From Lama glama (Eukaryota): DNA of 64,000 bases. The stretch spans positions 15,066,001 through 15,130,000 of the forward strand of contig CM052820.1 in assembly GCA_028534125.1 (NCBI GenBank), written 5' to 3'. A program made the position numbers and the translations under genes. Below the pieces are notes generated by a model. That model was not told where the DNA came from. It ran no database searches and was given only the letters and a program-made list of their open reading frames with translations. This document shows positions 19,001-62,968 of the stretch, piece by piece. The first letter of the stretch is position 1. Each line of letters opens with the position of its first letter.

Positions 19001-22000
19001 CTCCTGACAGCCAGCCCTCCTCTCTTCCCTCTTCCCTGGCTCCTGTCCTCACTGTATGGGGACTTGGTCCTGCCCAACAAAACGGATGCAGCCCCCACCC
19101 TCTTACGGGCTCCCAGAGTCTCATTTGTCCCGCATCTCTCTCCCCACCACATCCAGCCATCTCCCTACCATCCCCAGCTGTCTGTAGGAGATACCCCTGA
19201 ACTTCTGCAAATCCCCCCCCCCGCCCTGTCCTGAGCCGTTTCCTGAAGAGGCAGAGGAGCCCTCTTTCCCCAGCACAAACATGCACCCTCCCCTAGTTGA
19301 CAACCCCAAGGAGAGCAGAAGAAAACTCTTCTTGACCAGACTAGGGTATGTCGGGGTGGAAGGGGTGAAGGGGTGTGAGAACTGGGGTGGGAAGGAGTCA
19401 GGGTGAGTGGGGAGCCACTGAGATAGTACAGGGTGGCACTCAGTCCTGCTCCAACCTCCATAGAAGGGGACTTCACAGGCTTCTTCACCTACCCACGGAC
19501 TCACACTCTAGAGAGCTGCTCAAGGCCTAACTCTAATCCCTCCGCTAAAATGTAAGCCCCTTCTTTCCTTCTTAGACCTTAACCCAGATAGAGAAAAGTA
19601 GCTTCCTTTCCTCCCTGGAGTTCTCTGCCAGGATCTTAGTGCCATCACTCAGCCTTCTCTTCTCCCTGATTCATCCCCATTCCTTTCATCTTTCCTCATA
19701 GGCTTTTTTTGGTTTTAGCCCCTCCAGTTTGGTCATATCCCTGCTGTCCTGGGTGCTTTCCAGGTTTCCTACATCCCTCTGAGACTGTGGAGTGCTTTAA
19801 ACAGGGCCTGAGCAGGCTGGCAGTGACCTCACGGGGCCACTATGCACGGTTGCTATCTATAGCCTTATAGGATCATCCTCCTTTTCCTCTAGGCAGCTGA
19901 GTCACAGTCAGCTTGGGGTCCCCTCAGACCCCAGGGCCTTCTCTGCCACTCCAGACCACAGTCCATTACAGCATCCTGAGTTGTTCTTACTGCTGGGTAG
20001 GATGATTATTCTCTGAAACGTCTAAATACACAATGAAAGTGAGTCTTGGGTTTCAGAAGACACCCATTCTCAGACCCTCAGTGTTGTTATAGCCCAAGTT
20101 CTCTATCTTCTCACATCTGTCCAGATCGACAGCCAGTGGCCTAAGTTCCACTTGACTCTGCAGAGGTACAGGCAAGGTGAGGAATTTGGGGAGCAGCTGC
20201 TGGGCTGGGTTCAGATTGGATCTACCACTCTTGGGTGAGTTGCTTCATCCCTCAGAGCCTTAGTTTCCTCATCTGTAAAATAATAACAGCATAGGGTGTG
20301 GGGGAAGATTAAATGAGAAAATGTCTATAAAGTGCTTAGCACAGTGCCTGGCACACAGTGAGTGTTCAGTAAGTGCCAGCCATTACTACTGTTTTGTTGC
20401 CCTTGGACAGATAAGGAAACTGGTTCATGGAAGTCCAGGGACTGGCTTGAGTCTTTGCTTCAGGAGAGCAGGTGTAGGGCCAAGATTCATAGCCAACACT
20501 GCCTAACTCCAAAGCTTCACTCCAGAGCTCTCTATTACAGGATGTGCTGCCTCTGATAATAGCATAGCTACCACTTATTGAGTGCCTATTGTATACTAGA
20601 CATGGTATTCTGGACACCTGCTATATCAAATCACTGTACCTCTAACTAATCTTTACAACCCTGGGAAGTAACTATGAGCCTCATTTTACAGTTAGTATAC
20701 TAGGCTCAGAGAGGTTAGGTAAGTTCCCTAAGGTTGCACAGCAAGTAAAAACAAAGTCTGGATTTGAACTTTAGCTGATGGCTCCTAGAAACCCAGCTCC
20801 TCTCTCTATGTGGTAGCTAAGGCCTTGCCATATACTGACTTGACAGGCTTAGCTATAGTCTTTCCCCTTTTAACTTGGCCCTGTCCAGGGATCTCCGCTG
20901 AAAAGTCCCTTGTCCAGTAATGGGCAAGTCCCTCTGAACACTGTGCCCTGCTCCTCTCCCCAACCCCACTGCCCTCCAGAGAGGGGCCCAGGCTTGGAAG
21001 GTGCAGGTTTTAGGAAGTCTGGCCTTCATCCCACCAGAGCTAGGGGGCAGTGAAGATTTCCTATCCAGGGAATAAAGGGGCCAGTGGGGGCCACTCTGCC
21101 TTGTGTCACCCTCAGGCCAGCCAGGCACAGGGCTCCCCCGCAGGCTGGAGGGGCTCCCCGAGTGCACCCTGGCCTCAGACTGCCCCCAACTGGCCTGGGA
21201 GGAGGCCTCAGGCAACAGCATGCACAATTCTGTCCTGAAGAGGTGGCCTGGAGGACTGGGACCAGGGACTGAGCTTGGTCCTGTGGCCTCGGGGTTCAAA
21301 AGAAACTCTGGGGTCCACTGCCTCAGCTGCCCAGCCCCAGAGGTGCCAAGAGACATCCCAGATACACTCCCCTTCCCAATTTTAAAGATCCTGAGGGATT
21401 CAATTTGTTAAAAACAGAGCGCTGGTGTTCTTCCTCCCCACCCATAGTCAGAACTCTACCCCACAACCGTCCCAAAGGGCCCCTGACGCCCCCTCCCCAT
21501 CCAGCCTCAAAGAGATGGGCCAAGCTCTCCCTCTGCCCTTCTCCAGGCTCCCCAGCCACGCTGGGCACCAGAATAGACCACTGACCACCTGCCCCGGGGG
21601 GCTGGGCGGGGCCACAGCCGGTGCTGCCACTCAGGCTGGGGTAGGGGATTGGAAGGTGGGGCGAGGACTGCACTAGGGCGCTCCAGGGCCCCAGGCGATT
21701 TCCAGCGGCTTCTCTGTGTGGTGCAAAGGGCTCTCCACCGACACCGGACCGACAACTTCCCAGCCTGGACAAGGCTTGGAGCACCAGACACTCTCAAGAT
21801 AGGGCTCAGGCCGAGTTTCGGGCCCCAGCTTCTTCCGCCTCTGTCTCCGGCCTCCGTTTCTCCCCCTCTCTGGGCTCTGCCCACTTGCCCTCACCCCCAC
21901 CTCAGGTCTTTCTTCACCACCCCTGTAATCTCAGCCCCTCGACCCCAACCCCGGATCTCTGGGTCTCTACCCCTTCCCCTCCCCCAGCTCCATCTAAGTG

Positions 22001-33104: not shown

Positions 33105-42752
<9,648 letters not shown>

Positions 42753-43821: not shown

Positions 43822-44291
43822 ATTAGGGGTTGAATTGTGTCCGCCCAAAAATGTTGAAATCCTAACCCCTAGTACCTATCAGCGTGTTCTTACTTAGAAA
43901 TAGGGTCTTTGCAGATGATCAAGTTAAGATGAGGTCATTATTGTGGGTCCTCATCGAATATGACTGTGTCCTTGTAAAAAGGGGAAATGTGGACACACAG
44001 ACAGACATGCACAGAGGGAAGAAGATATGAAGACAGGGAGGATGCTGTGTGAAAATATAGGATCCGAGTGATGCATTTACAAGCCAAGGAGAGTCAAAGA
44101 TTGCCAGCAAACCACGTGAAGNNNNNNNNNNNNNNNNNNNNNNNNNNNNNNNNNNNNNNNNNNNNNNNNNNNNNNNNNNNNNNNNNNNNNNNNNNNNNNN
44201 NNNNNNNNNNNNNNNNNNNNNNNNNNNNNNNNNNNNNNNNNNNNNNNNNNNNNNNNNNNNNNNNNNNNNNNNNNNNNNNNNNNNNNNNNNN
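43822..44291 (+). mobile_element. MaLR LTR (MLT1-type), 3' part covered by an N run (44122-44291)
   Basis: gggttgaattgtgtcc...gaaatcctaacccctagtacc...gaaatagggtctttgcagatg. Confidence 0.8.
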
Positions 44292-47515: not shown

Positions 47516-50024
47516 TAGAATTCCTTTGAAATTGAGAATAAGTTAAGAATGCCTGCTATTCTGTTTCTATTGAACACTGTACTGTAGGTCCTGAATTGGA
47601 GTGGGCAACTCCGAGTGTATGGTGAATAGAAGACATGAAAGTTGGGGGTGGAGAGAGGGAGGTGATTCCTTAGGAGAAAGTGTCTCACACTTCCTGGAAG
47701 CAGTTTCATGGTAGCAGGGCTCAGAAGGGAGGTTGGCTTTGAGTTCGAATTACTACTATTAATCACCATAGGTTTTAATGTGCAAATCATGCCTTAGTGT
47801 TTTCAAAGCACTCTTTACATCTTCAGCCTCATTTGATTCTCATAACAGCATCATTATTAAATTCCCGCTTGATCACATAATACATGCCAAGCACTGTGCT
47901 AAGAAACTTACATGCATTGGCTCCTGTCATTCTCTCAACGACTCTCTGAAGTTAGTCATTTCATAGATGAGAAAACTGAAGCTTGGCAAGTTTAATTAAA
48001 TTTCCCTTGGTCACAGAGCTAGTAAGAACAGGGACTCAAATACTGAGCTGGGCAGAAGGCAAACTCCTGCACCCCAGCCAGTCTCTGGATTCCTCCACCT
48101 TGTGGTCGCTGTGCACTTTAGGGAAAGTGGAAATTCAAATCACACTCTGGTTTCTGGGGTGGGTCTGTCAGACTGGCCCAAGTGTTAGCTCATTCCATCC
48201 TTTCACCATGATATCACTAGAGATGTGAAGACTCAGAAGTTGGAGCACACGCCCAGCCTCCATGGCCCGGAGACCTGCTCAAGGGATGGGCAGGCGACCT
48301 TTCCCACCAAAACCACCAGGCCAAGGTATGTGAGGCCTGTGCCCTGTCCACACTGCACATGTCTGGTAGACAGAGCAATTGGGAAGGAAATGAGTTTTAG
48401 GGCTATAGGTAGGAGCTGTCAGAAGTCCTATGAATAGAATGAAGACAGGGCCTGTCTGATTTCAGCCAGAAGCAACCCCATGATCCATTAGTGATGTCTG
48501 CAAAGGGAGGGGAGTGGGAAGCACACCTTCTATTTGCTATCCCCAACTTAATCTTTGTCTTCTAGGGGCAAGCTCCAAGAGAAACTGCCACTGTTTTTCC
48601 CTAGGGTGAGAGTCCTTCATGGATTTTGGGCCTCTTCTCTTCTTCCCTGGGCCCTTTCACCCTTTTCTCTTCACCTTTGACTCCTGGCTTCCCTCCCCTC
48701 AGAGCCCAGTGACCGAGGTGAACAGGGAGCAATGCTTGAACTCTGAAGTGGTTTCAGAGGCCCTGAACCAAGAGGTGACCAACCCCAGCAAGGCCTTGCT
48801 GTGTGTGTTTTGGTGAGGGGGGCTGGCCTTGTCCAGGAAGGCTGAGCCAGCCAAGAGTCTGTTTAAAGAGGGAGGCAAGGTGAAGGAAGGGACAGGTGTT
48901 GGCTGATAAGGAATGACAGGACTCCACTGAGCCTGATGGAGAACCTTCAGGAAGAGAGGGCCTGGAGGATAGGAAAGAACAGCGCTTTCAGTACAGACAA
49001 AGCCAGCCCAATCCTGGCTCTGTCGCTGCCCAGCTGTGACCTTGGACACATTATCCAAGCCCTTCAAGTCCCTTCTTCCACAGCTGTGAAATGGGGATGG
49101 TAGTCATGGTGACCCTCAGGGATTGATGTAAGAATTAAAGACAACTGTATGAAAAACGCCTTGGCTGCCAGTGGTTGCTGGATTCTAAGGGAGATTCTTC
49201 CTTTTGCCCACTGGAGGGTGCCCCCACAAGCATCTTTACACAGACACCTTTACACAGATTGCAGAAATGTGAGATACAGGGGCTGCGGGTCTCCAGTGGC
49301 CTGGTGTTCTGTAAGATCAAGCACAGGCACAGAGCTCGAAGGACCTGCAGAAATCTACTTCAGAACTTGTCTAACTTAAAAAGTATATACACAAGCCCTG
49401 TTTTTCTAAGAAAATCTTCAGTATGACATGACCCTAATCCTCCCCTCACCCACCCATCCGTATGTATTATACGTACATACATAAAGATTTTGTCCTAAAA
49501 TGAAGTGGGAGAGACGTAGCCAGAGCACCTTACATTCAGCCTCCCCCTTGCTCTTCTCTTGGTGTCGAGGAATTCACCTGAGTAAAGCTTTCAGGCATCT
49601 CCTTGGGACCCTTAAGTTCTTTGGCGCCAGGAGAGAAAATCTCCCATCTAATAGATATCTACCCGTCTTTACAGATGAGAAACTGAATGGGCAGGTGTGG
49701 AGCAGAACTAGACCAAGTGTCCTGACTCCCAGCCGTCCCTCTGCACTGCCCACACCCTTCCTCCCAGGGACCCTGGTAGAGGTTGGGCTGCTTCACACCT
49801 CAGACTTTTTTATTCAAGGATTGCCTGAGGAGGTGACTACTTGAACTTTAACCTAAAGGACACAAAGAAACAGCCAGGGGGAGAGCTGGAGGAAGAGTCC
49901 GGAAGGCGGGGAGAAGCAAATACAGTCGCCCTTAGGTGTGATGGTAGAACTTTCAGGGCAATGGACAGTATGGCCTGTGGCAGGAGAGGAGCTTGGAGAT
50001 GAGGCCCAGGACTACTCAAGGTTT

Positions 50025-50155
50025 TTTTTTTCAAACATTTTTTTATTGAGTTATAGTCATTGTACAATGCTGTGTCAAAGTCCAGTGTAGAGCACAATTT
50101 TTCAGTTATACATGAACATACATATATTCATTGTCACATTTTTTTTCGCTGTGAG
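50025..50155 (-). mobile_element. Short LINE-1 3' end inside copy A
   Basis: Poly(T) start and TSD ctcaaggttt at 50015 and 50156. Confidence 0.8.
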
Positions 50156-51650
50156 CTCAAGGTTTATAATCTACAGACAGCCTCTGGGTTTGATTCAAAA
50201 TGCAGTGGGAAATCATCAGGGGATTTTAAAGGAAAGAACAGGAAAATATGATAAATATTTTCTAAAGTTACACTGATGCTGATGGAAAAATAGATTATGA
50301 AATGGACAAGAAGAGAAGCAAGTAGACATTTTTGGGGCTACTGAGTTATCCAGACAGGATCTGTTGGTACCTCAGACTAAGATCGGGGCAGCGTTGCTGA
50401 GAAGCTCCACCTGGGCTCTGTCTGGAGGCGGCCTGCTCCTCAGAGGCACTCCAGCCCTTCACCCCTTTCAGAGACACTAGTCCCATCCCTGTCACCATGG
50501 CAGCAGAGCTTCCTTAGCTCGTATTGGCTGCTGGACCACATTATCGGTCCTGTGACTGACCCTGTGATGAGGACTGGTTACCATGGTTCTATCAAGTATG
50601 TAAACAAGGAGCTGCCAGTCTCCTCCAGGCTCAGGGGACGAACCAGCCCTGTGTCTAACAGAAAATCTGTGGTAGGAGATGGGACTAGAGACGGGGGCCA
50701 GGGGAGGGCCTGCAGTCTGACAGTTCCTGAGCCACTAGTCTCAGGGCCTATTCAGATCAAGACTGCTATTGAGATTCCTTCTGAATTTGGTTGAGGTGGG
50801 GTGGGTGAGGGAGTAGCAACACCTACCTCATTGCATTCACTGAAAATTGCTAGTTTCTTCCCATTTTAGGGTGTTCTTGAGCTGTTCCCTACTCTGAGTC
50901 ACAACCTTGCAGCTGATTAAGGCCTCAGGGGAAGCCTCCCATCCTCCACACCTTCCCTGGTGCTTTCCAGAAGGGCAATTTCAGGCTGATCCAAATATGG
51001 GTTATTAAAGCCAATTTCCAAGCAAACTCTTTCTACAGACTTGTCTAGAAGTAGGATGGGCGGGGCTTGGACCTGACCAGAGTCTCAGAGGTGAGAGAAG
51101 TGGGATCCGAACACAGGGGAGCTTGGGGTATGGAGGACAGAGAGCACAGCCCCTGGTTGCCCTGCAGGCCTGGTTTCAGATCCCTTCCTCCTCCCACAGC
51201 CCATTTCTAAGGCAGGTTAGAGGCAAGGTGGAATTGCAGCCAGAGCAGCAGCCATCCCTACTCATAGCCTTCAGATGTTTCTCCTTGGTCTTCCTTCCAT
51301 TTGTGGAAGGAAAATGTTCTCTCCAGAGCCCAAGTCTGAAAGGCCTGGTATGTTGCTCTGCCTTTTGAGGTTCACGGTATCCTCTGAGCATTGGGGTCCC
51401 CTACAGAGAAGTCATGCCAGTCCTGGCCCCAAGAAACCACACAGAGAATAATGCAGCTAAAGGCTATGCACATTTAACAGGTTGATATCTGTGGCCAGTT
51501 TGCCCTGGGAGGCAGGAAATTAGTCACCATTGCTCAACACAGCCGAACTCCAGCTGTCGCGTGTTCCAGGATTTACATTTCTCAAAGCACCTCACACTCA
51601 GTTCATTTGATCCTTGCAAATAGGAGCACATGGAAAAGTATCAAGACCAC

Positions 51651-52022
51651 TGTCTTAATCTGTTTGGGCTGCTATAACAAAATACCATAAACGTGGTGGC
51701 TTGTAAACAACGGAAATTTATTTCTCATAATTCTAGAGGCTGGGAAGACCAAGATTAAAGCCCTGGCAGATTAGGTGTCTGGTGAGGGCCTGCTTCTTGG
51801 CTCATAGATGGCACCATCTTGCTGTAACTTCACATGGTGGAAGGGTGAGAGNNNNNNNNNNNNNNNNNNNNNNNNNNNNNNNNNNNNNNNNNNNNNNNNN
51901 NNNNNNNNNNNNNNNNNNNNNNNNNNNNNNNNNNNNNNNNNNNNNNNNNNNNNNNNNNNNNNNNNNNNNNNNNNNNNNNNNNNNNNNNNNNNNNNNNNNN
52001 NNNNNNNNNNNNNNNNNNNNNN
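51651..52022 (-). mobile_element. MaLR LTR (MLT1A-like), partly covered by an N run (51852-52022)
   Basis: tgtcttaatctgtttgggctgctataacaaaataccataaac...aaatttatttctcataattctagaggctgggaag. Confidence 0.8.
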
Positions 52023-52334
52023 TTATAGAGCCCAGAGAAATTAAGAGACACTCCTCTGGTAATACAGACTTCATCATGCTGCCAGTACATGTCCCCTTCC
52101 CCATAACCTTGCATCTAAGGACATAGCTAAATATAATACTCATCATATTTACTATCTCTAGTTCTTATTAGTGAGGTTGACCCCTACCACCCATCTTACT
52201 TTTTCCCATCATGTGTTTACTTTGCCTGGCCACTGGGATAAATGGTTCCTGCCTCAAGGCAATTGAAGACTAGCGAGGGAAGTAAATCATAGATATAACA
52301 CATTTATGCAATAGATACTTATTGAACACATGTG

Positions 52335-54425
52335 TAATTGACCCCATAGGATCCCTGCTTTGTGTCTCCTACCCAGTCTCTGAGCTCATAAGCAGCTGGA
52401 CAGTGTCTGCATGTGCTGACACCTTCCCACCTCAAGCCATGGGATTTCTCATCCAGTGGATTCTCTGGAATGCCTGGAAACTTGCCTACTTATGCTCAAG
52501 ACAGTCTTGAATTATCTGGGATTTAACACCCTCAGAGGCAGCCCTCAAACAGGTAAGGTCTTAGTTTAGTAGTAAATGTCCCAACATATCCTGTTCTTGT
52601 TGGAGTCAATCTGAGACAATTTCTACAGATGCTCAGGTGTCTCCAGCAGGGTATACTCCCAGTTTCTTACTGTGAAGGATAACTTTCTATGTCAGTTTGC
52701 CTGGGTTAAGGGATGCCCACATAGCTGGTAGAGCATTATTTCTGAGTGTATCTGTGATGATATCTCTGGAAGAGATTAACATTTGAAACAGCAGATTGAG
52801 TAAAGAAGATCACCAATGCAGATGGGCATTATTCAATCCGCAGAGGACCTGAATAGAATAAAAAAGTGGAAGAAGGGCAATTTGCTCTCTCTACTTGCGC
52901 TGAGATAGCCATCTTTCCCTGCTCCTGGACATCAGTGCCTCTGGTTCTTGGGCCTTTGGACCCAGACTGAATTACAGCACCAGCTCTCCTGGTTCTGTGC
53001 TTGCAGGTGGCAGAATACGGGACTTCTCAACCTCCACAATTGTGTGCTTGACCTTTCCTTCCTTATTTTGAATTATTGAAACAGTTTTAAGTGTTCTAGT
53101 TTAATGTATCAATTGTGGTTTTTACTATCTTTCTATAGTTTTTTATGTGGTTGCTCTGAGGATCAGAGTATACATAAGTTTTCACAGTCTACTTATAATC
53201 ACTGTTTCACCATTTCAAGTGGAATGGTAGAAATCTCACCAGCATACAGTTCCCATTACTCTCCCACAATTCTGTTGTAGTTGTCAACCAGAATCAGTAA
53301 CATCTTTATACATTGAAGCCTTTATCAGACAATGTTATAATTCTTGCTTCCAACCATCATACATGTTTTAAATGATTCTAGAGGAAACAAATAGTATACA
53401 ATACTCATCCAGATATTTCCCACTTCTATTGTTCCTCCTTCATCCTGACATTTCAAGTTTCCTTCAGATACTGTTTCCCTTTATCCGAAGAACTTCCTTC
53501 AGCAATTCTTGTAGCGCAGGTATGCTTGCAATTAATTAATTTTTCTTCATCTTAATTTCACTTTCATTCCTGAAGTGTATTTTACTGGATATAAAATCCT
53601 GGGTTAACAGCTCATTTCTTCACCGCTCAAAATATGTTATTACACTTCCTTCTGGGCCCCATGGTTTATAATGAAAAATCCACTGTCATTTGGATTATAG
53701 TTCTCCTTTAAGTGATGTGCTATTTTTCCTCTCTGGATTTTTTCAAGATTTTTTTCTTTGTTTTTAGTTTTTAGATGTCTGCCTATGATGTATCAGGACA
53801 CGGATTTTTTTCAGGTTTATCCTGTTTGGAATTCACTGAACTTATTGACTCTATAAATTCATGATTTTGACAAATTTGGGAAGTTTTCAGCCATGATTTC
53901 TTCAAGTTTTTTTTTTCTTAATATACTACCTTTTTCCTCCTCTCCTTCAGGGACTCCAGCAACATGAATGTTAGACTCTGTGTATTCTCCCACAGGTCTA
54001 TGAGGCTCTGCTAACTTCCCCCCCCCCAATATTTTGTCTCTGTTGTTCTGATTGCATCATGTCTATTGATCCATCTTTAAGTTAACTAACACTTTCCTTT
54101 GTCATTCTTATTCTGTTGTTGAACTTACCTAGTGAATTTTTATTTTTGTTATTGTATTTTCCATTTCTATATAGCACATTAGAAGAACAAACAGAACAGC
54201 TAGTAGGAGGAGATGTGATTGGAGAAGTAAGCTCAAACAACAAGTTTATACTGTATAGCACAGGGAACCATATTCAATATCTTGTAGTAACTTATGGTGA
54301 AAAAGAATATTAAAGTGAATATATGTATGTTCCTATGTGACTGAAGTATTGTGCTGTACACCAGATATTGACACAACATTGTAAACTGACTATACTTCAA
54401 TAAAAAAATATTAAAAAAAAAAAAG
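52335..54425. mobile_element. Repeat cluster: LTR16-like, MLT2-like (about 52670-53050), antisense L1M (about 53050-54170), L1 3' end (about 54236-54425)
   Basis: Recognisable LTR and L1 motifs; internal boundaries approximate. Confidence 0.65.
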
Positions 54426-54479
54426 TAATCCCAGAACTGACCACATAGAGTCTTGCAGGTAATAGTAAAGAGTCTAGAT

Positions 54480-55320
54480 CTTACACAGAGGACAGAAGAA
54501 GATCATTAGGGCTTTTAAGGAAATGAGTAGAATAATAATGCAAAAATTTTAAAGACCAGCTTAGTACTGTTGGAGAATGTATTGACAGAGGGCAAGAGTG
54601 GAACAGACAGATCTGTTAGGAAGTATTATTTTGGTCCAGGGAATACTGCAGTAGTTTGAACTGGGCAACCACACAGAGCCGAGAACCTCCAGCTGGCCAT
54701 GGACTTTACCCAGAGGAGCCTGAGCCTCAAGGGGAATGCTCTCCAAGGAAACAGCTTCTGACTTCTGTCACCATGGCAACTGTGCTTCATTTGCCCAGAA
54801 TGGTTGCTGGGGTGACACATCAGCACTGAGTGACTGATCACCACAATAAGAACTGGTTACCATGGTATAAAGTCTGCAAACAAGAAGCTGCCATTCTTCT
54901 CCAGGTTAGAGTTCTTGACTAGCTATAAATCTAAGAGAAAATCAGGAGCTGGAGAGAAGATCAGGGCCAGAGAGCCAAGGGGAGGCCAGCTGTGGGGCAG
55001 TTGCTGAGTCATTTTGCCTCAGGACTTGCCCAAATCAAGACAGCTATTAGAGGGGAAAGGGGAGTTTACATTGTAGAGAGGGAGTACTCCAGCACATATA
55101 CACACAAATTACAAATTCCACATTTCCTTCCATTTTAGGGCTTCTTTGAACTGTTTCCTTCTCCAAGCAAAACTTTGTAGCTGACTGAAGCATCGCTATC
55201 CTCCACCCACTGCACTGCCATTTAGAGGGGCAGGTCTAAGACAACTTGCTTCCGAATTTTTAAAGTGGGTTTTGGTCAAAATCCTTCTTGTGGGCTTGTC
55301 TGATGGCAGGAAATGTGGGC
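54480..55320 (+). pseudogene. Further duplicate fragment (copy B): DNPEP exon 14 relic, intron and frameshifted terminal exon
   Basis: ttttag|GGCTTCTTTGAACTGTTTCCTTCT at 55139 (GFFELFPSPSKTL*, 1-nt deletion); upstream 54686-54910 aligns with 42260-42500, 50400-50630 and 62487-62720. Confidence 0.85.
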
Positions 55321-57716: not shown

Positions 57717-59992
57717 ATGCAGCGCCTGCTGTGGCCTGGGGGCTCCCGGGGGCTCTGGCTGCTCCTCTGTTTCCTGCTTCTGAACAGCCGCCCAGGGGGC
57801 TGCAGCGACATTGGTGGCCACGGTCAGGAGGAAACCTGGGGGGTGCGGGCAAGGCTAGAGAGCGATTCTGAGCGAAGCACGCTGGGATGGGGGAGCTCAA
57901 GGTTTGGAACTTAAGAGGAAAGTAATGTGTTTAGGGGTGAAAATAGATGAATGTAGAGAGCATCTCGCCCAAAGAGGCGCAGGCTTGGAGTGGGGCTCGG
58001 CATAGGGGCTCTGCGACTCAGAGGACTCAGGGAAGCCCACTCAGGGGAAGACTGGGGATTTGGGAAGAGGACGGGGAAACATGCATTGGGGGAAGTAAAA
58101 CTGGCCTGTGAGGCCGCAAGAAAAGCAAGACGAGCCAAGGGGCCAGGGAAAAGATGCCTATGGCTGAGGGGTAGGCAGGGGACTAGAATCTCTAGACTGC
58201 AGGAGCAGGGACCGCGGGTTATCGGAGTCCTGGCTCCGAAGAGAAGGCTGGGCCGAGGGATGAGCCAAGGCTTCTTTATAAGCCCCCCAGAGCCTGGTGT
58301 CAGCGATCCAATTTCTGCTAAGAAGTGGAAGGCTAGGCCGGGGTAGAAGAGGATGGAGAGAGAAACAGTCCATCCTTTTTCCATCCCCTTCACTCTGAGC
58401 CAGCCAGGTAGACCATCGCTGACTCATGTCTGAGCTGCCAGAGACCGACTGCGCAGACTCAGGGATTCCAGCGCCTGGCGCGTGGGGCAGACGGCGCAAA
58501 CTCAGAGCCTAACGCCAACTTTCCTCCCCCGATCTGTGGGGTTTAGATGCCAATGCAGAGGACTCCCGAAGAACTGTGGGAGGAGGCCTGATGTCAAGCG
58601 ACAGGAAGCAAGGCGTGGGGAGCGGGTGGGGGTTGGTTGTGAGGACGATCAAGCCTTGTGGGAATGCCCAGCTCTCTTCACCGCTCAAAGTCGCCCCCAT
58701 GTCAGGCTTTGGCCATCACTCAGCACCGCGGACAGCGCCAGGAGCCCTGTGGGTCTGACCCAGGGTGTCCAGTTCACTGCTTTTCCTATCCGTTCTGGGA
58801 GTGCTGCCTCAGAGAACAATCTCTCCTTCCAGAAGCTCTTTTCCTTCTCAACAGGGTGCTGGAGGTTCTGGTCCTTCCTAAAGCCAGGAAATTAATATTA
58901 GGATCCATTTGACTGGGGAGAATTCGCAGTCCATAATGACTTGTGGTAATTCCACTATAGGGAAAACAAACAAACAAACAGACTCCAGTCCTACCCACCT
59001 ACCTGGAATAAGGAAAGTGTGTATAGCATTAGGGATTATCTCCATCTCCTTTCCTTCCCTTATGCAGTCTGCCAAACTGTGGCTTTCAGAACAAGGATCC
59101 AGACACTCAAACCCTATACATACCATACTTTTTTTCCTTTAAGGATTCCAGGCCTCCTCTGTAATCCCCTCCAGGCTTCAAAGACTTCCCTGAATGCAAT
59201 TTGCCTGTTTTCCATGCCCTGCCTGTTCACCTGATTATCCATTTCATGTGTGTAGCTTTCTGAGTCTCTGCTTATCTTAACCTCCACAGGATGCTCTTTG
59301 CCTGTAAGCTTGGTTCTTACTGGAAGTTGGTGCCAAAGATGAATGAGATTCAGGGGCTGAAGAACAGGGAAAGTGGTGATGGGGAGGGAAATATGAAAAG
59401 AAGGAGGACTTGAAATTAGGAGGGGGTCTGATGAGGGGGACAGAGACCAGTGAACCCAGGGATGTTAGTGGGAGGAAGCTGCTTTCCTTCAACTGGGATT
59501 TGTAAGTCTTCTGGCCAGGCTCCTTTCTCACACCACTATTTTGCTCTTAGATGGTCAGAGCCAAGTGGGAGTGGGGCAGCTCTGGTCCCTCCAAGGATTT
59601 ACTACCCCAGTCTTCCAGCGCTTGCAAGTTTTCTTCCAGCAGATTGTGCCTCAAGGTGAGTAAAAGGTGAAGAGAGTCTGGGACCTGGTCAGATACAAGG
59701 GTAGGTAATAATGAGGGGCTTTTTATTTGAGAACAGGTTTTCTTCCCCAGATATCTCTTCTTGAAACTTTTCTGTCATGCTTACCTCCTGGAGGACCAGG
59801 TGGGACCAGAGTAAGTGTGGAGCTGGAAGGACAGGCTGTTTGCACTTGAACATCCTGGAAGAACCCAGTAGAGGCTTCTAGAAGAAGCCCTTGGAAGATG
59901 TCAGCATCCAACTCCTTGAGACTAGCCCCAACCCCAACCACAGGCACTATCTGAGATTTTACAGAGACAGGAATCCTTAAATTCTCAGCCAG

Positions 59993-60043
<51 letters not shown>

Positions 60044-62968
60044 CAGCTTCTGAGTAGGAAGCAGAGCAGATTATAGGACAAATAGAAGGGAGGGATGAAG
60101 GGAGTGAGGAGCCTCTTGAAGACAAATGGCCAACCCTTCCTTATAGCAGAGTTGCATGAATGAGAGAAGAGTCCCATAGGAAATGCAGCTTGAGTTCATT
60201 GTACTACTACCACTACGAATGTCTATCATGTTTATAATGCCTTAGAGCAGCGGTTCTCAAAGTGCATCCCTGGACCAGTAGCAGCATCACCAGGAGACTT
60301 GTTAGAAATGCTAATTCTTGAGCGTCATCTCAGACCTCTTGAATCAGAAACTCTAGGAGTGAGGAACAACAATCTGTGTTTTAACAAGCTTTTTGGGAGA
60401 TTCTGATGCACCCTAAAGTTTGGAAATCACTGTCTTAGTTTTCTCAGCAATTTTTATATCCCTAATCTCATTTAATCCTCACAATAGCATCAAATGAATC
60501 AGCAAAAAGAGTATAGTCTTAATCCTAACTGAACATTTATTACATGCCAGGAACTGTGCTATGCAACTTTTATATGTCATCTCATTTAATTCTCTCCACA
60601 AATTGTGATCTTTTATCTACCTGAGGGAGAGGGGGAGTGTTGATCTCACTCTGGTCCCTGGAGTGGGCCAGTTAGAACATCCCCGGTGTTAATTCACCAC
60701 ATCTTTTCACCCTGCAGGTTTGTTCTGGAAGGATGACATGACCCAGAATGTGATGACCCAGAAGATGGGACACATTAGCAAACTCCATCCCCAGGATCCA
60801 TGTGTGAGGGTTGGACAGGCAGCCTTTCCCACCAGAACCACTGGGATGAGGTATGTGAGGCCTATGGTCAGTCCATGCTGTCTGACTGACAGACAGAGCA
60901 AGGAGGGAGCAGGCATTAATGCAGGTAAGAGCTGCCAGGAGCACTATGAGAATGATTCAGAGGTCCTGTCTGTGATCTGCAGGAAACAGTTCCATGAGCC
61001 ATTAGTAATGTCTGCAAAGGGAGAGGAGGCGGGTGCTAACAAGCCTAGGTCCCATTTATCATCCCCATGTCTTTTAGGGGCAAGCAAGAGGAGAAACTTC
61101 GACTCTTATTCCCCAAGGTGAGACCCATGTGTCTTCTCAAGACATGAATCCTGACTTTGGGTCCCATCTCTTTCCCTCAGGGGCTCTGCCACCTTTTTCT
61201 GTCTCCTTCTTGATTCCTGTCTTCCTTCTTCACAGAGCCCAATGGCCAAGGTGAACAAGGATCAGTGCTTTACCTCCAGAGTGGTTTCAAAGGCCTTGAA
61301 ACAAGAGGTGGCCAACCCTGTCAAGGTGAGGGCTCACTTTTTCTTGGGAGGCTAGAATCACCAAAGACTTCTTTAAATGAGGGAGGCAGGTGTGAAGGAG
61401 GGAATGGGCATTGGGATGTGAACAAAAAAGCTGAAGAAAATATCTTTCCCAATTGAATGGTACCCAGATTTTCCTGTCTCTCAGACCACCTTTGGGTGTC
61501 CAAATAAGAGGTTGAGGGGCATGATGCAGGTGCTGAGAGCCTCTAAGGGTGAAATGATCTATAGTATCATGAAAAACAATTGAGTTTAAAATAGGCATGC
61601 AAAATTGAAGGGTTTCACAATTAAGTAAAAGGTCCCTCTTTTCTCCATACACTCCTCTGTATATAGCAAGTGATAGTGAAGTTACTTTGGATGAATGGAA
61701 GAGGTAGCCCAGAGGCCTTTGCATTCAGCACCTCCCTGCCTTGCTCTACTCTGTGGCCTGAGTGAGCATCCCAAGGTTCTGCATTATCTCTTTGGGATGC
61801 TTGAACACTTCAGAATTCGACTGAAAACACTCATATAGCCCTCCCATCTATCTTTATAGATAAGACATTGGGGCCCAGGCTGGTCAAGCAGCTTACTCAA
61901 GGCTTCATAGCAGGTTCATGGCAGAGCAAAGACTGGACCCAGGTGTCCTGATTCTCAGCCCTTTCCCCTGCAAAGCCTCTACCCTTCCTCTCAGGGACTG
62001 CAGCAGGGGTTGGGCTGTCCCACATACCAGACTCTTCAACATGGACAAGTCTTTTTTTGGACTAAGGCCTAAATTACAAGAAGGTGCCAGCCAGAGGACA
62101 ATATAAAGGAAGGGCATCCAAGGCAGAGAGCACCATACTGACAAATGCCCTGAGACAAAGATCCATAGTATGTCTGAGGGACAGATGGAAAAGTCAGTGG
62201 TAGAGAATTAGGTTAGAGAATGTAGGACTGGGGTTGACCACACAAGGACTCATAGATCATGGTGGAAGGTTTGGATTTTATTCCAAGTGTGGTGGCAAGT
62301 CGATGGGGAAATTTTAAGGAAAGGGATATCATAATGTGATATGATTTGAAAAGACCACTCTAGTGATATTGGGGGATGGATTGTGAGAAAACTAAGAGTG
62401 AAAACTAAGAGGCCTATAAGGAGCTGATCATCCTGGTACAAGGGAGACTGAGGTGGCTTGGACTGGAATGGTGGCAGTGGAGTCGGCACCTCCAGCTGGC
62501 CGTGCACTCCATCCAGAGGCATCCTGCTTCTCTGGGGCTTCCAGCCCCTTATGCTCTCCTAGGAAACCTGTTCTCACTCCCATAAGATGGCAGCTGGGCT
62601 TCCTAAGCCTGGATCGGCTGCTGGGTCGGAGCACACAGAGCTAAGTGAAGACCACCTTTGGGAGACTTGTTGGTGTGGTGCTTTCAAGAAAACAAACAAG
62701 ATACTGCCATGCTTCTCCAGCCTGAGCCCAAGGGAAAATCACAGGATGAGAACCCTATGAATTCCATGTGGGAGCAAGGGGACAAGCACTCAATCGATGG
62801 ACTGAGTTACTGTGGGCTTACTTAAATCAGGCTGTTACTGAAGCATTTTGGAACGAGTAGGTGAGGGAGGGGCCACCTTCCCACATACTGATTCCAATCC
62901 TTTGTTTCTTGTTTTAGGGCTTCTTTGAGTCACCCTCCACTGTAGGCCACAACCTTGTCGCTGACTGA
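57717..62968 (+). CDS. RESP18: Regulated endocrine-specific protein 18, 6 coding exons, 174 aa, with signal peptide
   Basis: Exons 57717-57822, 59551-59655, 60718-60850, 61078-61117, 61236-61325, 62918-62968 = 525 nt, all GT-AG and in frame: [61 protein letters not shown]...[16 protein letters not shown]...[16 protein letters not shown]. Position next to DNPEP fits known synteny. Confidence 0.95.
58719..58739 (+). promoter_or_regulatory. RE1/NRSE (REST binding site) in RESP18 intron 1
   Basis: CTCAGCACCGCGGACAGCGCC matches 19 of 21 positions of the consensus TTCAGCACCACGGACAGCGCC. Confidence 0.9.
59995..60041. repeat. (CA)n microsatellite in RESP18 intron 2
   Basis: Perfect dinucleotide run. 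Confidence 0.97.
60248..60432. mobile_element. MER5A-like hAT MITE in RESP18 intron 2
   Basis: 185 nt, terminal inverted repeats cagcggttctcaaagt / agtttggaaatcactg, degenerate 8-nt TSD ccttagag / tcttagtt. Confidence 0.85.

What the first reader, a model, noticed from the sequence alone, without database searches (positions are those of the whole stretch)
47600..52100. Second RESP18-like gene relic with stop-free exons between DNPEP and RESP18
Four exon equivalents in order: 48208-48325 (DITRDVKTQKLEHTPSLHGPETCSRDGQATFPTKTTRP, donor gtatgt), 48566-48605 (GKLQEKLPLFFPR, 40 nt, AG/GT intact), 48703-48792 (SPVTEVNREQCLNSEVVSEALNQEVTNPSK) and 50870-50920 (GVLELFPTLSHNLAAD*), then ATTAAA at 51004. 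None has an internal stop or indel despite heavy divergence. Visible lesions: a 21-nt deletion removing the exon 3 acceptor (equivalent to 60712-60732), a GC at the exon 5 donor, and no recognisable exons 1-2 (repeats lie upstream). Inference: a RESP18 paralog that stayed under coding constraint for a long time and may be intact in other mammals.
Basis: partly seen in the sequence, partly recalled or inferred. Interest (0 to 1): 0.8.

Follow-up and report, generated by a model that had tools for sequence, protein, structure and literature searches.

The report
Dead RESP18-like paralog in alpaca
Between DNPEP and RESP18 the alpaca carries the decayed, 5'-truncated remains of an ancient second RESP18 gene that automatic annotation still calls a gene in carnivores and horseshoe bats; its stop-free exons are mostly chance, not proof of recent function.

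Summary
Coordinates, peptides, splice sites, the 21-nt deletion and ATTAAA are exact. 47781-52097 is collinear with RESP18 intron 2 to its 3' flank (best block E 2e-88), and the exon 3 peptide passes Pfam's RESP18 threshold. The assembly gap lies about 930 nt past the stop codon and no exon or frame crosses it.

The relic ("B") is a true RESP18 paralog. It groups (99/98) with NCBI models named "RESP18-like" or "PTPRN-like N" from cats, mustelids, seals, canids, horseshoe bats and a colugo. B-type keeps the 102-nt DNPEP-type exon 5. Every RESP18 seen, including an afrotherian's, has a 12-nt deletion there, so the split predates crown placentals. At least twelve carnivore sequences keep a 124-aa open frame.

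In alpaca it is dead. There are no exons 1-2 and the exon 3 acceptor is deleted, a deletion shared with an organism far more distant than Camelus. A net +8 nt sits before the true exon 5 donor (48813). B-branch substitution is the same in exons and non-coding DNA (0.13 vs 0.14). Stop-freeness has P=0.27 under neutrality; only the lack of indels is mildly unusual (p about 0.001-0.14).

The parts
47781..47939 (+). MIR-like stretch collinear with RESP18 intron 2 (60421-60599). This is the possible 5' limit of the duplicated unit, but it could be two independent repeat copies.
   Evidence: the same element also hits 20280-20373 on the minus strand
48089..48207 (+). 3' end of the intron 2 equivalent. 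It ends at the 21-nt deletion that removed the exon 3 acceptor and the first 5 codons.
   Evidence: The deletion is absent from the B-type copies of other mammals, whose ORFs read ..AG|LFWKDD.
48208..48325 (+). Exon 3 relic, derived from PTPRN: part of the RESP18 homology domain. Donor AAG|gtatgt is intact.
   Evidence: PF14948, 35.5 bits, profile positions 41-77 of 103
48566..48605 (+). Exon 4 relic, 40 nt, homologous to DNPEP 38914-38953. Both splice sites are intact.
48703..48792 (+).
48793..48812 (+). Tail of the ancestral long exon 5. It is 12 nt in DNPEP and 0 nt in RESP18; here it is 20 nt with a (TG)n run, a net +8. The homologous GTGAGG donor follows at 48813. TGA at 48814-48816 stops a read-through.
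   Evidence: Bat, colugo and canid B-type proteins end this exon ..KAPLQ.
50400..50475 (+). Dead relic of the penultimate DNPEP exon inside the intron 5 equivalent. The same relic sits in RESP18 intron 5 and in the third copy.
   Evidence: 8 gap events shared by the B, C and RESP18 rows against DNPEP
50870..50920 (+). Exon 6 relic, 51 nt, stop TAA at the ancestral position, acceptor ttttag|G intact.
51004..51009 (+). ATTAAA poly(A) signal, aligned with those of DNPEP and RESP18.
51011..51511 (+). 3' flank homologous to the RESP18 3' flank.
51852..52022 (.). Assembly gap, outside every exon of the relic. Not filled.
54438..55319 (+). Third, partial RESP18/DNPEP-type 3' unit ('C'). Its exon 6-like stretch at 55139-55188 has a 1-nt deletion and a premature TAG, and its poly(A) signal is mutated to TTTAAA.
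57717..62968 (+). RESP18 proper: 6 exons (57717-57822, 59551-59655, 60718-60850, 61078-61117, 61236-61325, 62918-62968), 174 aa, identical to Vicugna pacos RESP18.
   Evidence: P0095
38914..42752 (+). Last exons of DNPEP (38914-38953, 39078-39179, one ending at 42337, 42702-42752). They are the source of RESP18 exons 4-6 and were used here as the outgroup.
   Evidence: Peptidase_M18

Best explanation
The stretch is the alpaca ortholog of an ancient tandem paralog of RESP18, called B-type here. NCBI pipelines name it 'RESP18-like' or 'receptor-type tyrosine-protein phosphatase-like N' in other mammals.

Origin (inferred): the chimeric RESP18 ancestor, built from the 5' exons of PTPRN and the 3' exons of DNPEP, was duplicated in tandem before the crown-placental radiation. 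B kept ancestral features that RESP18 lost. These are the 102-nt DNPEP-type exon 5, an ELFP.LSHNL tail and, in other species, the Cys-rich PTPRN-like segment after the signal peptide.

Fate (shown for alpaca): a non-processed pseudogene. Exons 1-2 and any GC-rich promoter region are gone. A 21-nt deletion removed the exon 3 acceptor; the deletion is shared with a relative much more distant than Camelus, so it is old. A net +8 nt before the true exon 5 donor breaks the frame into exon 6. Since then the exons have changed at the same rate as their introns.

The open frames of the four short exons are mainly what chance leaves over 98 codons. They may also carry a residue of an early functional period, which would explain the lack of indels and the slight excess of synonymous changes.
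For: Duplication and homology; Pfam RESP18 hit.

Orthology: in the tree of exon 3-5 peptides, alpaca B groups with bat, colugo, seal, raccoon dog and two unnamed ORFs, support 99/98, apart from RESP18 of ten species.

Age: the 12-nt deletion in exon 5 is present in every RESP18 examined, including the afrotherian Rhynchocyon (P0059). It is absent from DNPEP and from B-type in alpaca, bat, colugo and Lycaon.

Completeness of the ancestral gene: carnivore and bat models have a signal-peptide exon, a Cys-rich segment and an exon 2 equivalent. None of these is found in window 40-48.2 kb when they are used as queries. GC content there is 0.31-0.47.

Lesions.

Neutrality in the alpaca lineage. B-branch substitutions are 24/181 in exons 4-6 against 44/306 and 85/623 in non-coding DNA. 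P(no stop) = 0.27. Against the ORF P0149, which shares the 21-nt deletion, identity is 30/39 in exon 3' and 27/36 plus 23/33 in the intron read in the same frame. Camelus differs from alpaca at only 2 of 89 such intron positions next door, so P0149 comes from a far more distant relative.
Against: Indels are scarcer in the exons than in flanking DNA. There are 41 gap events per 774 nt of non-coding B-RESP18 alignment, and simulation gives only 0.001-0.013 spurious gaps per nt, yet the 299 exon nt have none. Expected on the B branch: 3.5-7.

Five of six splice sites and the poly(A) signal are intact.

The B branch has 10 synonymous and 14 nonsynonymous changes, omega about 0.5, p = 0.07.

Between orders, B-type peptides are almost as conserved as RESP18 itself: 0.64-0.68 against 0.70-0.74 identity.

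Expression in alpaca could not be tested. The organism behind P0149 is unknown. No DNA from other mammals could be fetched, so no dN/dS across orthologs was computed.
Confidence: 0.75

Rival explanations
1. One reading: the alpaca copy stayed under coding constraint until recently, so its intact frames reflect selection in the camelid lineage.
For: No stop and no indel in 299 exon nt, against an indel density of 0.053 per nt in flanking DNA. Synonymous:nonsynonymous 10:14 on the B branch. Exon 5' shows 7 B-specific changes in 90 nt against about 12.6 expected. Exon 5' is 22/29 identical to the Lycaon copy.
Against: The acceptor deletion is shared with an organism about ten times more divergent than Camelus, and since that split exon 3' has changed as fast as its introns. 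Exons 1-2 are absent. The ancestral exon 5 carries a +8 frameshift. Overall the exon rate equals the non-coding rate. P(no stop) = 0.27.
Confidence: 0.1
2. The relic's exons are still used in alpaca as non-coding or alternative exons. They could be part of an upstream transcript that reads through into RESP18, as the bat and canid gene models do, or of a DNPEP read-through.
For: Splice sites of exons 4', 5' (donor at 48813) and 6' and the ATTAAA are intact. Rhinolophus sinicus isoform X6 joins B exon 5 to RESP18 exon 3 out of frame. R. ferrumequinum and Lycaon models join B-type exons to RESP18 exons.
Against: No promoter or first exon was found upstream. No camelid B-containing protein model appeared in either protein search. 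RNA runs held only 5-7% of the sampled words of the stretch, and substitution looks neutral. Direct read evidence was not obtainable.
Confidence: 0.08
3. Dead on arrival: a partial duplication of RESP18 exons 3-6 that never had a 5' end or a function.
For: Only exons 3-6 are present in alpaca. A still shorter 3' fragment (54438-55319) shows that partial copies do occur here.
Against: Members of the same clade in carnivores and bats have their own signal-peptide exon, Cys-rich segment and exon 2 equivalent. The ancestral B was therefore a complete gene and the alpaca truncation is secondary.
Confidence: 0.05

Closest known systems
[quoted passage not shown]
   Same: Same exon order, phases and PTPRN/DNPEP chimeric build from exon 3 to the poly(A) signal. 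The homology runs through the introns, including the fusion intron 3. Both carry the dead relic of the penultimate DNPEP exon.
   Different: About 29% nt and 44% aa divergence in the exons. The relic keeps the long DNPEP-type exon 5 that RESP18 shortened by 12 nt. It lacks exons 1-2 and the exon 3 acceptor, and it is not an intact gene.
NCBI gene models 'regulated endocrine-specific protein 18-like' or 'receptor-type tyrosine-protein phosphatase-like N' (e.g. XP_019597437 Rhinolophus sinicus, XP_004762899 Mustela, XP_040332285 Herpailurus, XP_035938877 Halichoerus; LOC103581357 Galeopterus)
   Same: Same clade in the tree (99/98). Shared long exon 5 ending ..KAPLQ in bat, colugo and canid. Shared motifs in exons 3 and 5.
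   Different: Those models have a signal peptide, a Cys-rich segment and an exon 2 equivalent. In most listed carnivores they give a 124-aa ORF that ends inside exon 3. The alpaca copy has lost exactly that 5' part. Their genomic position could not be checked.
RESP18 homology domain of PTPRN (IA-2/ICA512), Pfam PF14948
   Same: Exon 3' matches profile positions 41-77 of 103 above the curated threshold.
   Different: Only about a third of the domain is present. The N-terminal Cys-rich part, which is reported to route IA-2 to dense-core vesicles (PMC9900141, citing Sosa et al. 2016), is missing.
DNPEP exons at 38914-38953, 39078-39179 and 42702-42752 (Peptidase_M18)
   Same: Exons 4', 5' and 6' are homologous, keep the same phase, and have equal lengths for the 40-nt and 51-nt exons. 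The introns and 3' UTR also align.
   Different: No peptidase context survives: the intervening DNPEP exon is a dead relic and the sequence is read as a RESP18-type tail.
Non-processed (duplicated) pseudogenes in tandem arrays
   Same: Retains introns, lies next to its parent in the same orientation, is truncated at the 5' end, and changes at the neutral rate.
   Different: It is unusually old, predating crown placentals. Its orthologs appear to be retained as open frames in some orders, so it is a lineage-specific loss rather than a never-functional copy.

Membership tests
RESP18 domain family (Pfam PF14948) | Score above Pfam's gathering threshold | tested here: met
   Exon 3' peptide scores 35.5 bits against a cutoff of 25, E 1.3e-8, profile positions 41-77 of 103. 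RESP18 exon 3 itself scores 70.4 bits.
RESP18 domain family (Pfam PF14948) | Complete domain, including the N-terminal part (profile positions 1-40; exon 2 equivalent) | tested here: not met
   No exon 1 or exon 2 equivalent in 40-48.2 kb, whether queried with RESP18's own peptides or with B-type peptides of bat, seal, raccoon dog and colugo.
B-type RESP18 paralog ('RESP18-like' / 'PTPRN-like N' of NCBI) | Groups with the B-type models, apart from RESP18 proper | tested here: met
   Branch support 99/98; the grouping appears in 100% of 200 bootstrap trees.
B-type RESP18 paralog ('RESP18-like' / 'PTPRN-like N' of NCBI) | Long DNPEP-type exon 5, without the 12-nt deletion of RESP18 | tested here: met
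   20 nt lie between 48792 and the homologous GTGAGG donor, against 12 nt in DNPEP and 0 in RESP18. Bat, colugo and Lycaon B-type proteins end this exon ..KAPLQ.
B-type RESP18 paralog ('RESP18-like' / 'PTPRN-like N' of NCBI) | Same genomic position (between DNPEP and RESP18) in the other species | not testable with these tools
The only indirect hint is that bat and canid models read through from B-type exons into RESP18 exons.
B-type RESP18 paralog ('RESP18-like' / 'PTPRN-like N' of NCBI) | Own signal-peptide exon and Cys-rich segment | tested here: not met
   Absent from the alpaca window. The gap at 44122-44291 cannot be excluded as a hiding place.
Intact protein-coding gene | Start codon or first exon, all splice sites, and a continuous frame | tested here: not met
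   No exons 1-2. The exon 3 acceptor is deleted. Exon 5 is 110 nt to the true donor, which shifts the frame, or else needs a poor GC donor at 48793.
Intact protein-coding gene | Exons change more slowly than introns, or omega is below 1 | tested here: inconclusive
   Rates are equal: 0.13 against 0.14. Omega on the B branch is about 0.5 with p = 0.07. Exon 3' equals the flanking intron against P0149.
Intact protein-coding gene | Transcribed and spliced | not testable with these tools
RNA runs held just 5-7% of the sampled words.
Processed pseudogene | Intronless, poly(A) tract, dispersed location | tested here: not met
   The introns are retained and align with those of RESP18 and DNPEP, and the copy sits in tandem.

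The most novel reading that the evidence does not exclude
B-type is a real mammalian gene that no paper in the searched library describes. It would be a second, older-looking RESP18 that encodes a secreted signal peptide plus Cys-rich RESP18-homology-domain protein. Selection would keep it in Carnivora (a 124-aa frame in cats, mustelids and seals) and perhaps in horseshoe bats, while camelids and probably many other orders have lost it. The alpaca relic is then the tombstone of a lineage-specific gene loss, and it preserves the ancestral PTPRN/DNPEP chimera better than RESP18 itself does.
Probability: 0.4. Interest if true: 0.6.

Novelty: new member of a known kind. Interest (0 to 1): 0.42.

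Why it matters
RESP18 and the RESP18 homology domain of IA-2/PTPRN are studied for sorting into dense-core granules and in type 1 diabetes autoimmunity. No paralog of RESP18 turned up in the searched literature.

The relic shows that the chimeric RESP18 gene was already duplicated before the placental radiation. It also shows that the sister copy keeps ancestral states: the long DNPEP-type exon 5 and, in other species, the Cys-rich PTPRN segment. These help to reconstruct how the chimera was built. The sister copy has had different fates in different orders: open frames in carnivores, variably spliced and read-through models in bats and canids, and decay in camelids.

For annotation, it explains odd 'RESP18' or 'PTPRN-like N' models and fusion models in several genomes. 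For the scan, it is a caution: over about 100 codons split into short exons, a stop-free frame is weak evidence of constraint.

Tried and rejected
1. I first took 38.7-43.0 kb for a further relic. It is DNPEP's own 3' end, and I then used it as the outgroup.

2. Stop-freeness as evidence of constraint: rejected by simulation, P = 0.27.

3. A search for exons 1-2 of the relic with RESP18 peptides, with B-type peptides and by ORF listing found nothing.

4. RNA and cross-species reads. The look-up of sequencing runs gave coded runs.

No dN/dS on orthologs was possible.

6. The branching order of B, the third copy and RESP18 is unresolved, with 23/28/23 informative sites.

The outgroup row was put together inside the script from P0035 and the window's DNPEP exon translation printed.

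Searches were exon by exon and by reference. Exons were concatenated only in local scripts for codon counts and the tree.

9. The P0015 cluster (unnamed, 207 contigs, possibly human) was not followed. The human entry P0146 and the Pan cluster P0120 were not fetched.

10. Literature searches found no paper on a RESP18 paralog or pseudogene.


Full report
**What is there**

The window holds the 3' exons of DNPEP (up to 42752) and an intact six-exon RESP18 (57717-62968, 174 aa). This RESP18 is identical to Vicugna pacos RESP18 (P0095), so the DNA is from alpaca or a very close relative.

The region 47781-52097 is collinear with RESP18 from intron 2 to its 3' flank in six blocks, the best with E 2.4e-88. 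The exon 3' peptide alone passes Pfam's threshold for the RESP18 domain (35.5 bits, cutoff 25). The 21-nt deletion (= 60712-60732), the splice sites and ATTAAA at 51004 are as described.

The assembly gap 51852-52022 lies 931 nt beyond the relic's stop codon. No exon or frame crosses it. Homology to RESP18's flank resumes in order on its far side, though that match is weak. I did not fill it.

**Context the finding lacked**

A scan of the whole window with the unit found two more homologous sets.

- One set is DNPEP's own last exons (38914-38953, 39078-39179, 42702-42752). RESP18 exons 4-6 derive from them. The scan had already noted this (s1-862753), and I saw it independently. It gives an outgroup for polarising changes.
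- The other is a third, partial 3' unit at 54438-55319. Its exon 6-like piece has a 1-nt deletion, a premature TAG and a TTTAAA in place of the poly(A) signal.

The relic, the third unit and RESP18 share eight gap events against DNPEP, so all three descend from one chimeric ancestor. Their branching order is unresolved.

**Correcting one lesion**

In the three-way alignment the GTGAGG donor of exon 5 is conserved in DNPEP, RESP18 and the relic, where it sits at 48813. Before it DNPEP has 12 nt that RESP18 has lost in frame. The relic has 20 nt there, with a (TG)n run. The ancestral exon 5 in the relic is 110 nt (net +8), which breaks the frame into exon 6. An in-frame TGA at 48814 stops any read-through.

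**Is the open frame more than chance?**

I polarised changes with DNPEP as outgroup.

- Substitution rate. The relic's own branch has 24 changes in 181 nt of exons 4-6 (0.13). Non-coding blocks have 44/306 and 85/623, about 0.14. There is no slowdown.
- Synonymous versus nonsynonymous. The exon changes split 10:14. Neutral expectation is about 6:17 plus one stop, p = 0.07.
- Stops. Simulating about 44 neutral substitutions over the 98 codons leaves no stop in 27% of trials, or 15% if all exon 3 differences are charged to the relic.
- Indels. These are the only notable signal. Non-coding relic-RESP18 alignments carry 41 gap events in 774 nt. Simulation shows the aligner invents only 0.001-0.013 gaps per nt. 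The 299 exon nt carry none. Depending on how events are assigned to the relic's branch, 3.5 to 7 are expected. That gives p from 0.03 down to 0.001, or 0.14 down to 0.007 once the exon 5 tail event is counted.

Together this suggests, at most, an early period of constraint.

**Relatives elsewhere**

I ran a profile of the two exon 3 peptides, by reference, against 1.84 billion representatives. It returned 37 proteins. Several are not RESP18 proper but share the relic's marks. Cluster look-ups and two word searches named them:

- Rhinolophus sinicus 'RESP18-like' isoforms
- a R. ferrumequinum model
- Galeopterus LOC103581357
- canid models (Nyctereutes, Lycaon)
- a 124-aa protein in at least 12 distinct sequences from Felidae, Mustelidae and Phocidae, naming at least 15 species and called 'receptor-type tyrosine-protein phosphatase-like N' or 'RESP18-like'

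In a tree of exon 3-5 peptides these sequences and the alpaca relic are split from RESP18 of ten species with 99/98 support.

Every RESP18 examined, including that of the afrotherian Rhynchocyon, has the short exon 5. B-type proteins of bat, colugo and Lycaon keep the long one, ending ..KAPLQ like DNPEP's ..VPLQ. Assuming one deletion event, the duplication predates crown placentals.

The carnivore and bat models have their own signal peptide, a Cys-rich PTPRN-like segment and an exon 2 equivalent. The ancestral B was therefore a complete gene. None of these parts is found upstream in alpaca.

**State of the paralog in other orders**

Three carnivore families keep a 124-aa frame with 73-81% pairwise identity. 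From general rates I would expect several stops and indels over that much neutral time, so selection on the frame seems likely. I could not compute dN/dS, and annotation favours intact frames.

The 3' ends of the models are unstable:

- The carnivore frame stops inside exon 3.
- Bat isoforms end in different exons. One joins B exon 5 to RESP18 exon 3 out of frame, and another reads through the lost stop of exon 6 into the 3' UTR.
- Lycaon and R. ferrumequinum models run on into RESP18.

The half of the gene that survives in alpaca is thus the half that seems least protected elsewhere.

**Timing of death in the camelid line**

An unnamed ORF from ENA assemblies (P0149) carries the same 21-nt deletion. 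Against it, alpaca exon 3' is 30/39 identical. The flanking intron, read in the same frame, is 27/36 and 23/33 identical. Camelus ferus differs from alpaca at only 2 of 89 such intron positions in the neighbouring RESP18 intron. P0149 therefore comes from a much more distant relative. I infer another artiodactyl, but this is not shown. The acceptor was thus lost long ago, and exon 3' has drifted neutrally since.

**What could not be done**

Afterwards I kept those places out of all searches.
- The P0015 cluster, which might be human, and the human and Pan entries were left alone.
- The literature searches found no paper describing a RESP18 paralog.

**Verdict**

The feature is real and was correctly recognised as a RESP18-like relic. 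It is the alpaca remnant of a pre-placental RESP18 paralog that survives as an open frame in some orders. In alpaca it is a long-dead, 5'-truncated, non-processed pseudogene. Its stop-free exons are not good evidence of prolonged constraint.

Noticed in passing
window 54438-55319: Third partial RESP18/DNPEP-type 3' unit between the relic and RESP18. Its exon 6-like piece (55139-55188) has a 1-nt deletion and a premature TAG, and its poly(A) signal is mutated to TTTAAA. Its branching order relative to the relic and RESP18 is unresolved (23/28/23 informative sites).
   Followed up: partly
proteins P0065-P0083: A 124-aa B-type open frame (signal peptide, Cys-rich segment, RESP18 homology domain, stop inside exon 3) is annotated in at least 12 distinct sequences from cats, mustelids and seals. 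It looks like a retained gene that no paper in the searched library describes.
   Followed up: partly
proteins P0040, P0058, P0085: Gene models in Rhinolophus sinicus, R. ferrumequinum and Lycaon pictus join B-type exons to RESP18 exons. These are read-through or fusion models and could mislead ortholog tables for RESP18.
   Followed up: no
protein cluster P0015: Unnamed ORF cluster with 11 members, one of them seen on 207 contigs. It holds a B-type exon 3 with an intact acceptor. The organism is unknown and might be human, so it was deliberately not followed.
   Followed up: no
window 50022-50147 and 54299-54424: Inverted pair of about 126 nt at 81% identity. This is probably a young interspersed repeat inserted into the relic's intron 5 and next to the third unit.
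   Followed up: no
window 49712-49801: The extra 3' exon of the bat isoform X3 aligns to the relic's intron 5 (50% aa identity, E 0.001), a stretch that is also conserved with RESP18 intron 5 (61924-62154). It appears to be an intronic piece that became an exon in bats.
   Followed up: no
window 59508-59550: The Cys-rich segment of the raccoon dog B-type protein aligns weakly to the DNA just upstream of RESP18 exon 2. This may bear on the scan's note of a PTPRN exon 2 fossil in RESP18 intron 1.
   Followed up: no
window 44122-44291: Second assembly gap (170 N) in the AT-rich, repeat-rich 43-47.6 kb stretch between DNPEP and the relic. It is the only place where lost 5' exons of the relic could still hide.
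   Followed up: no
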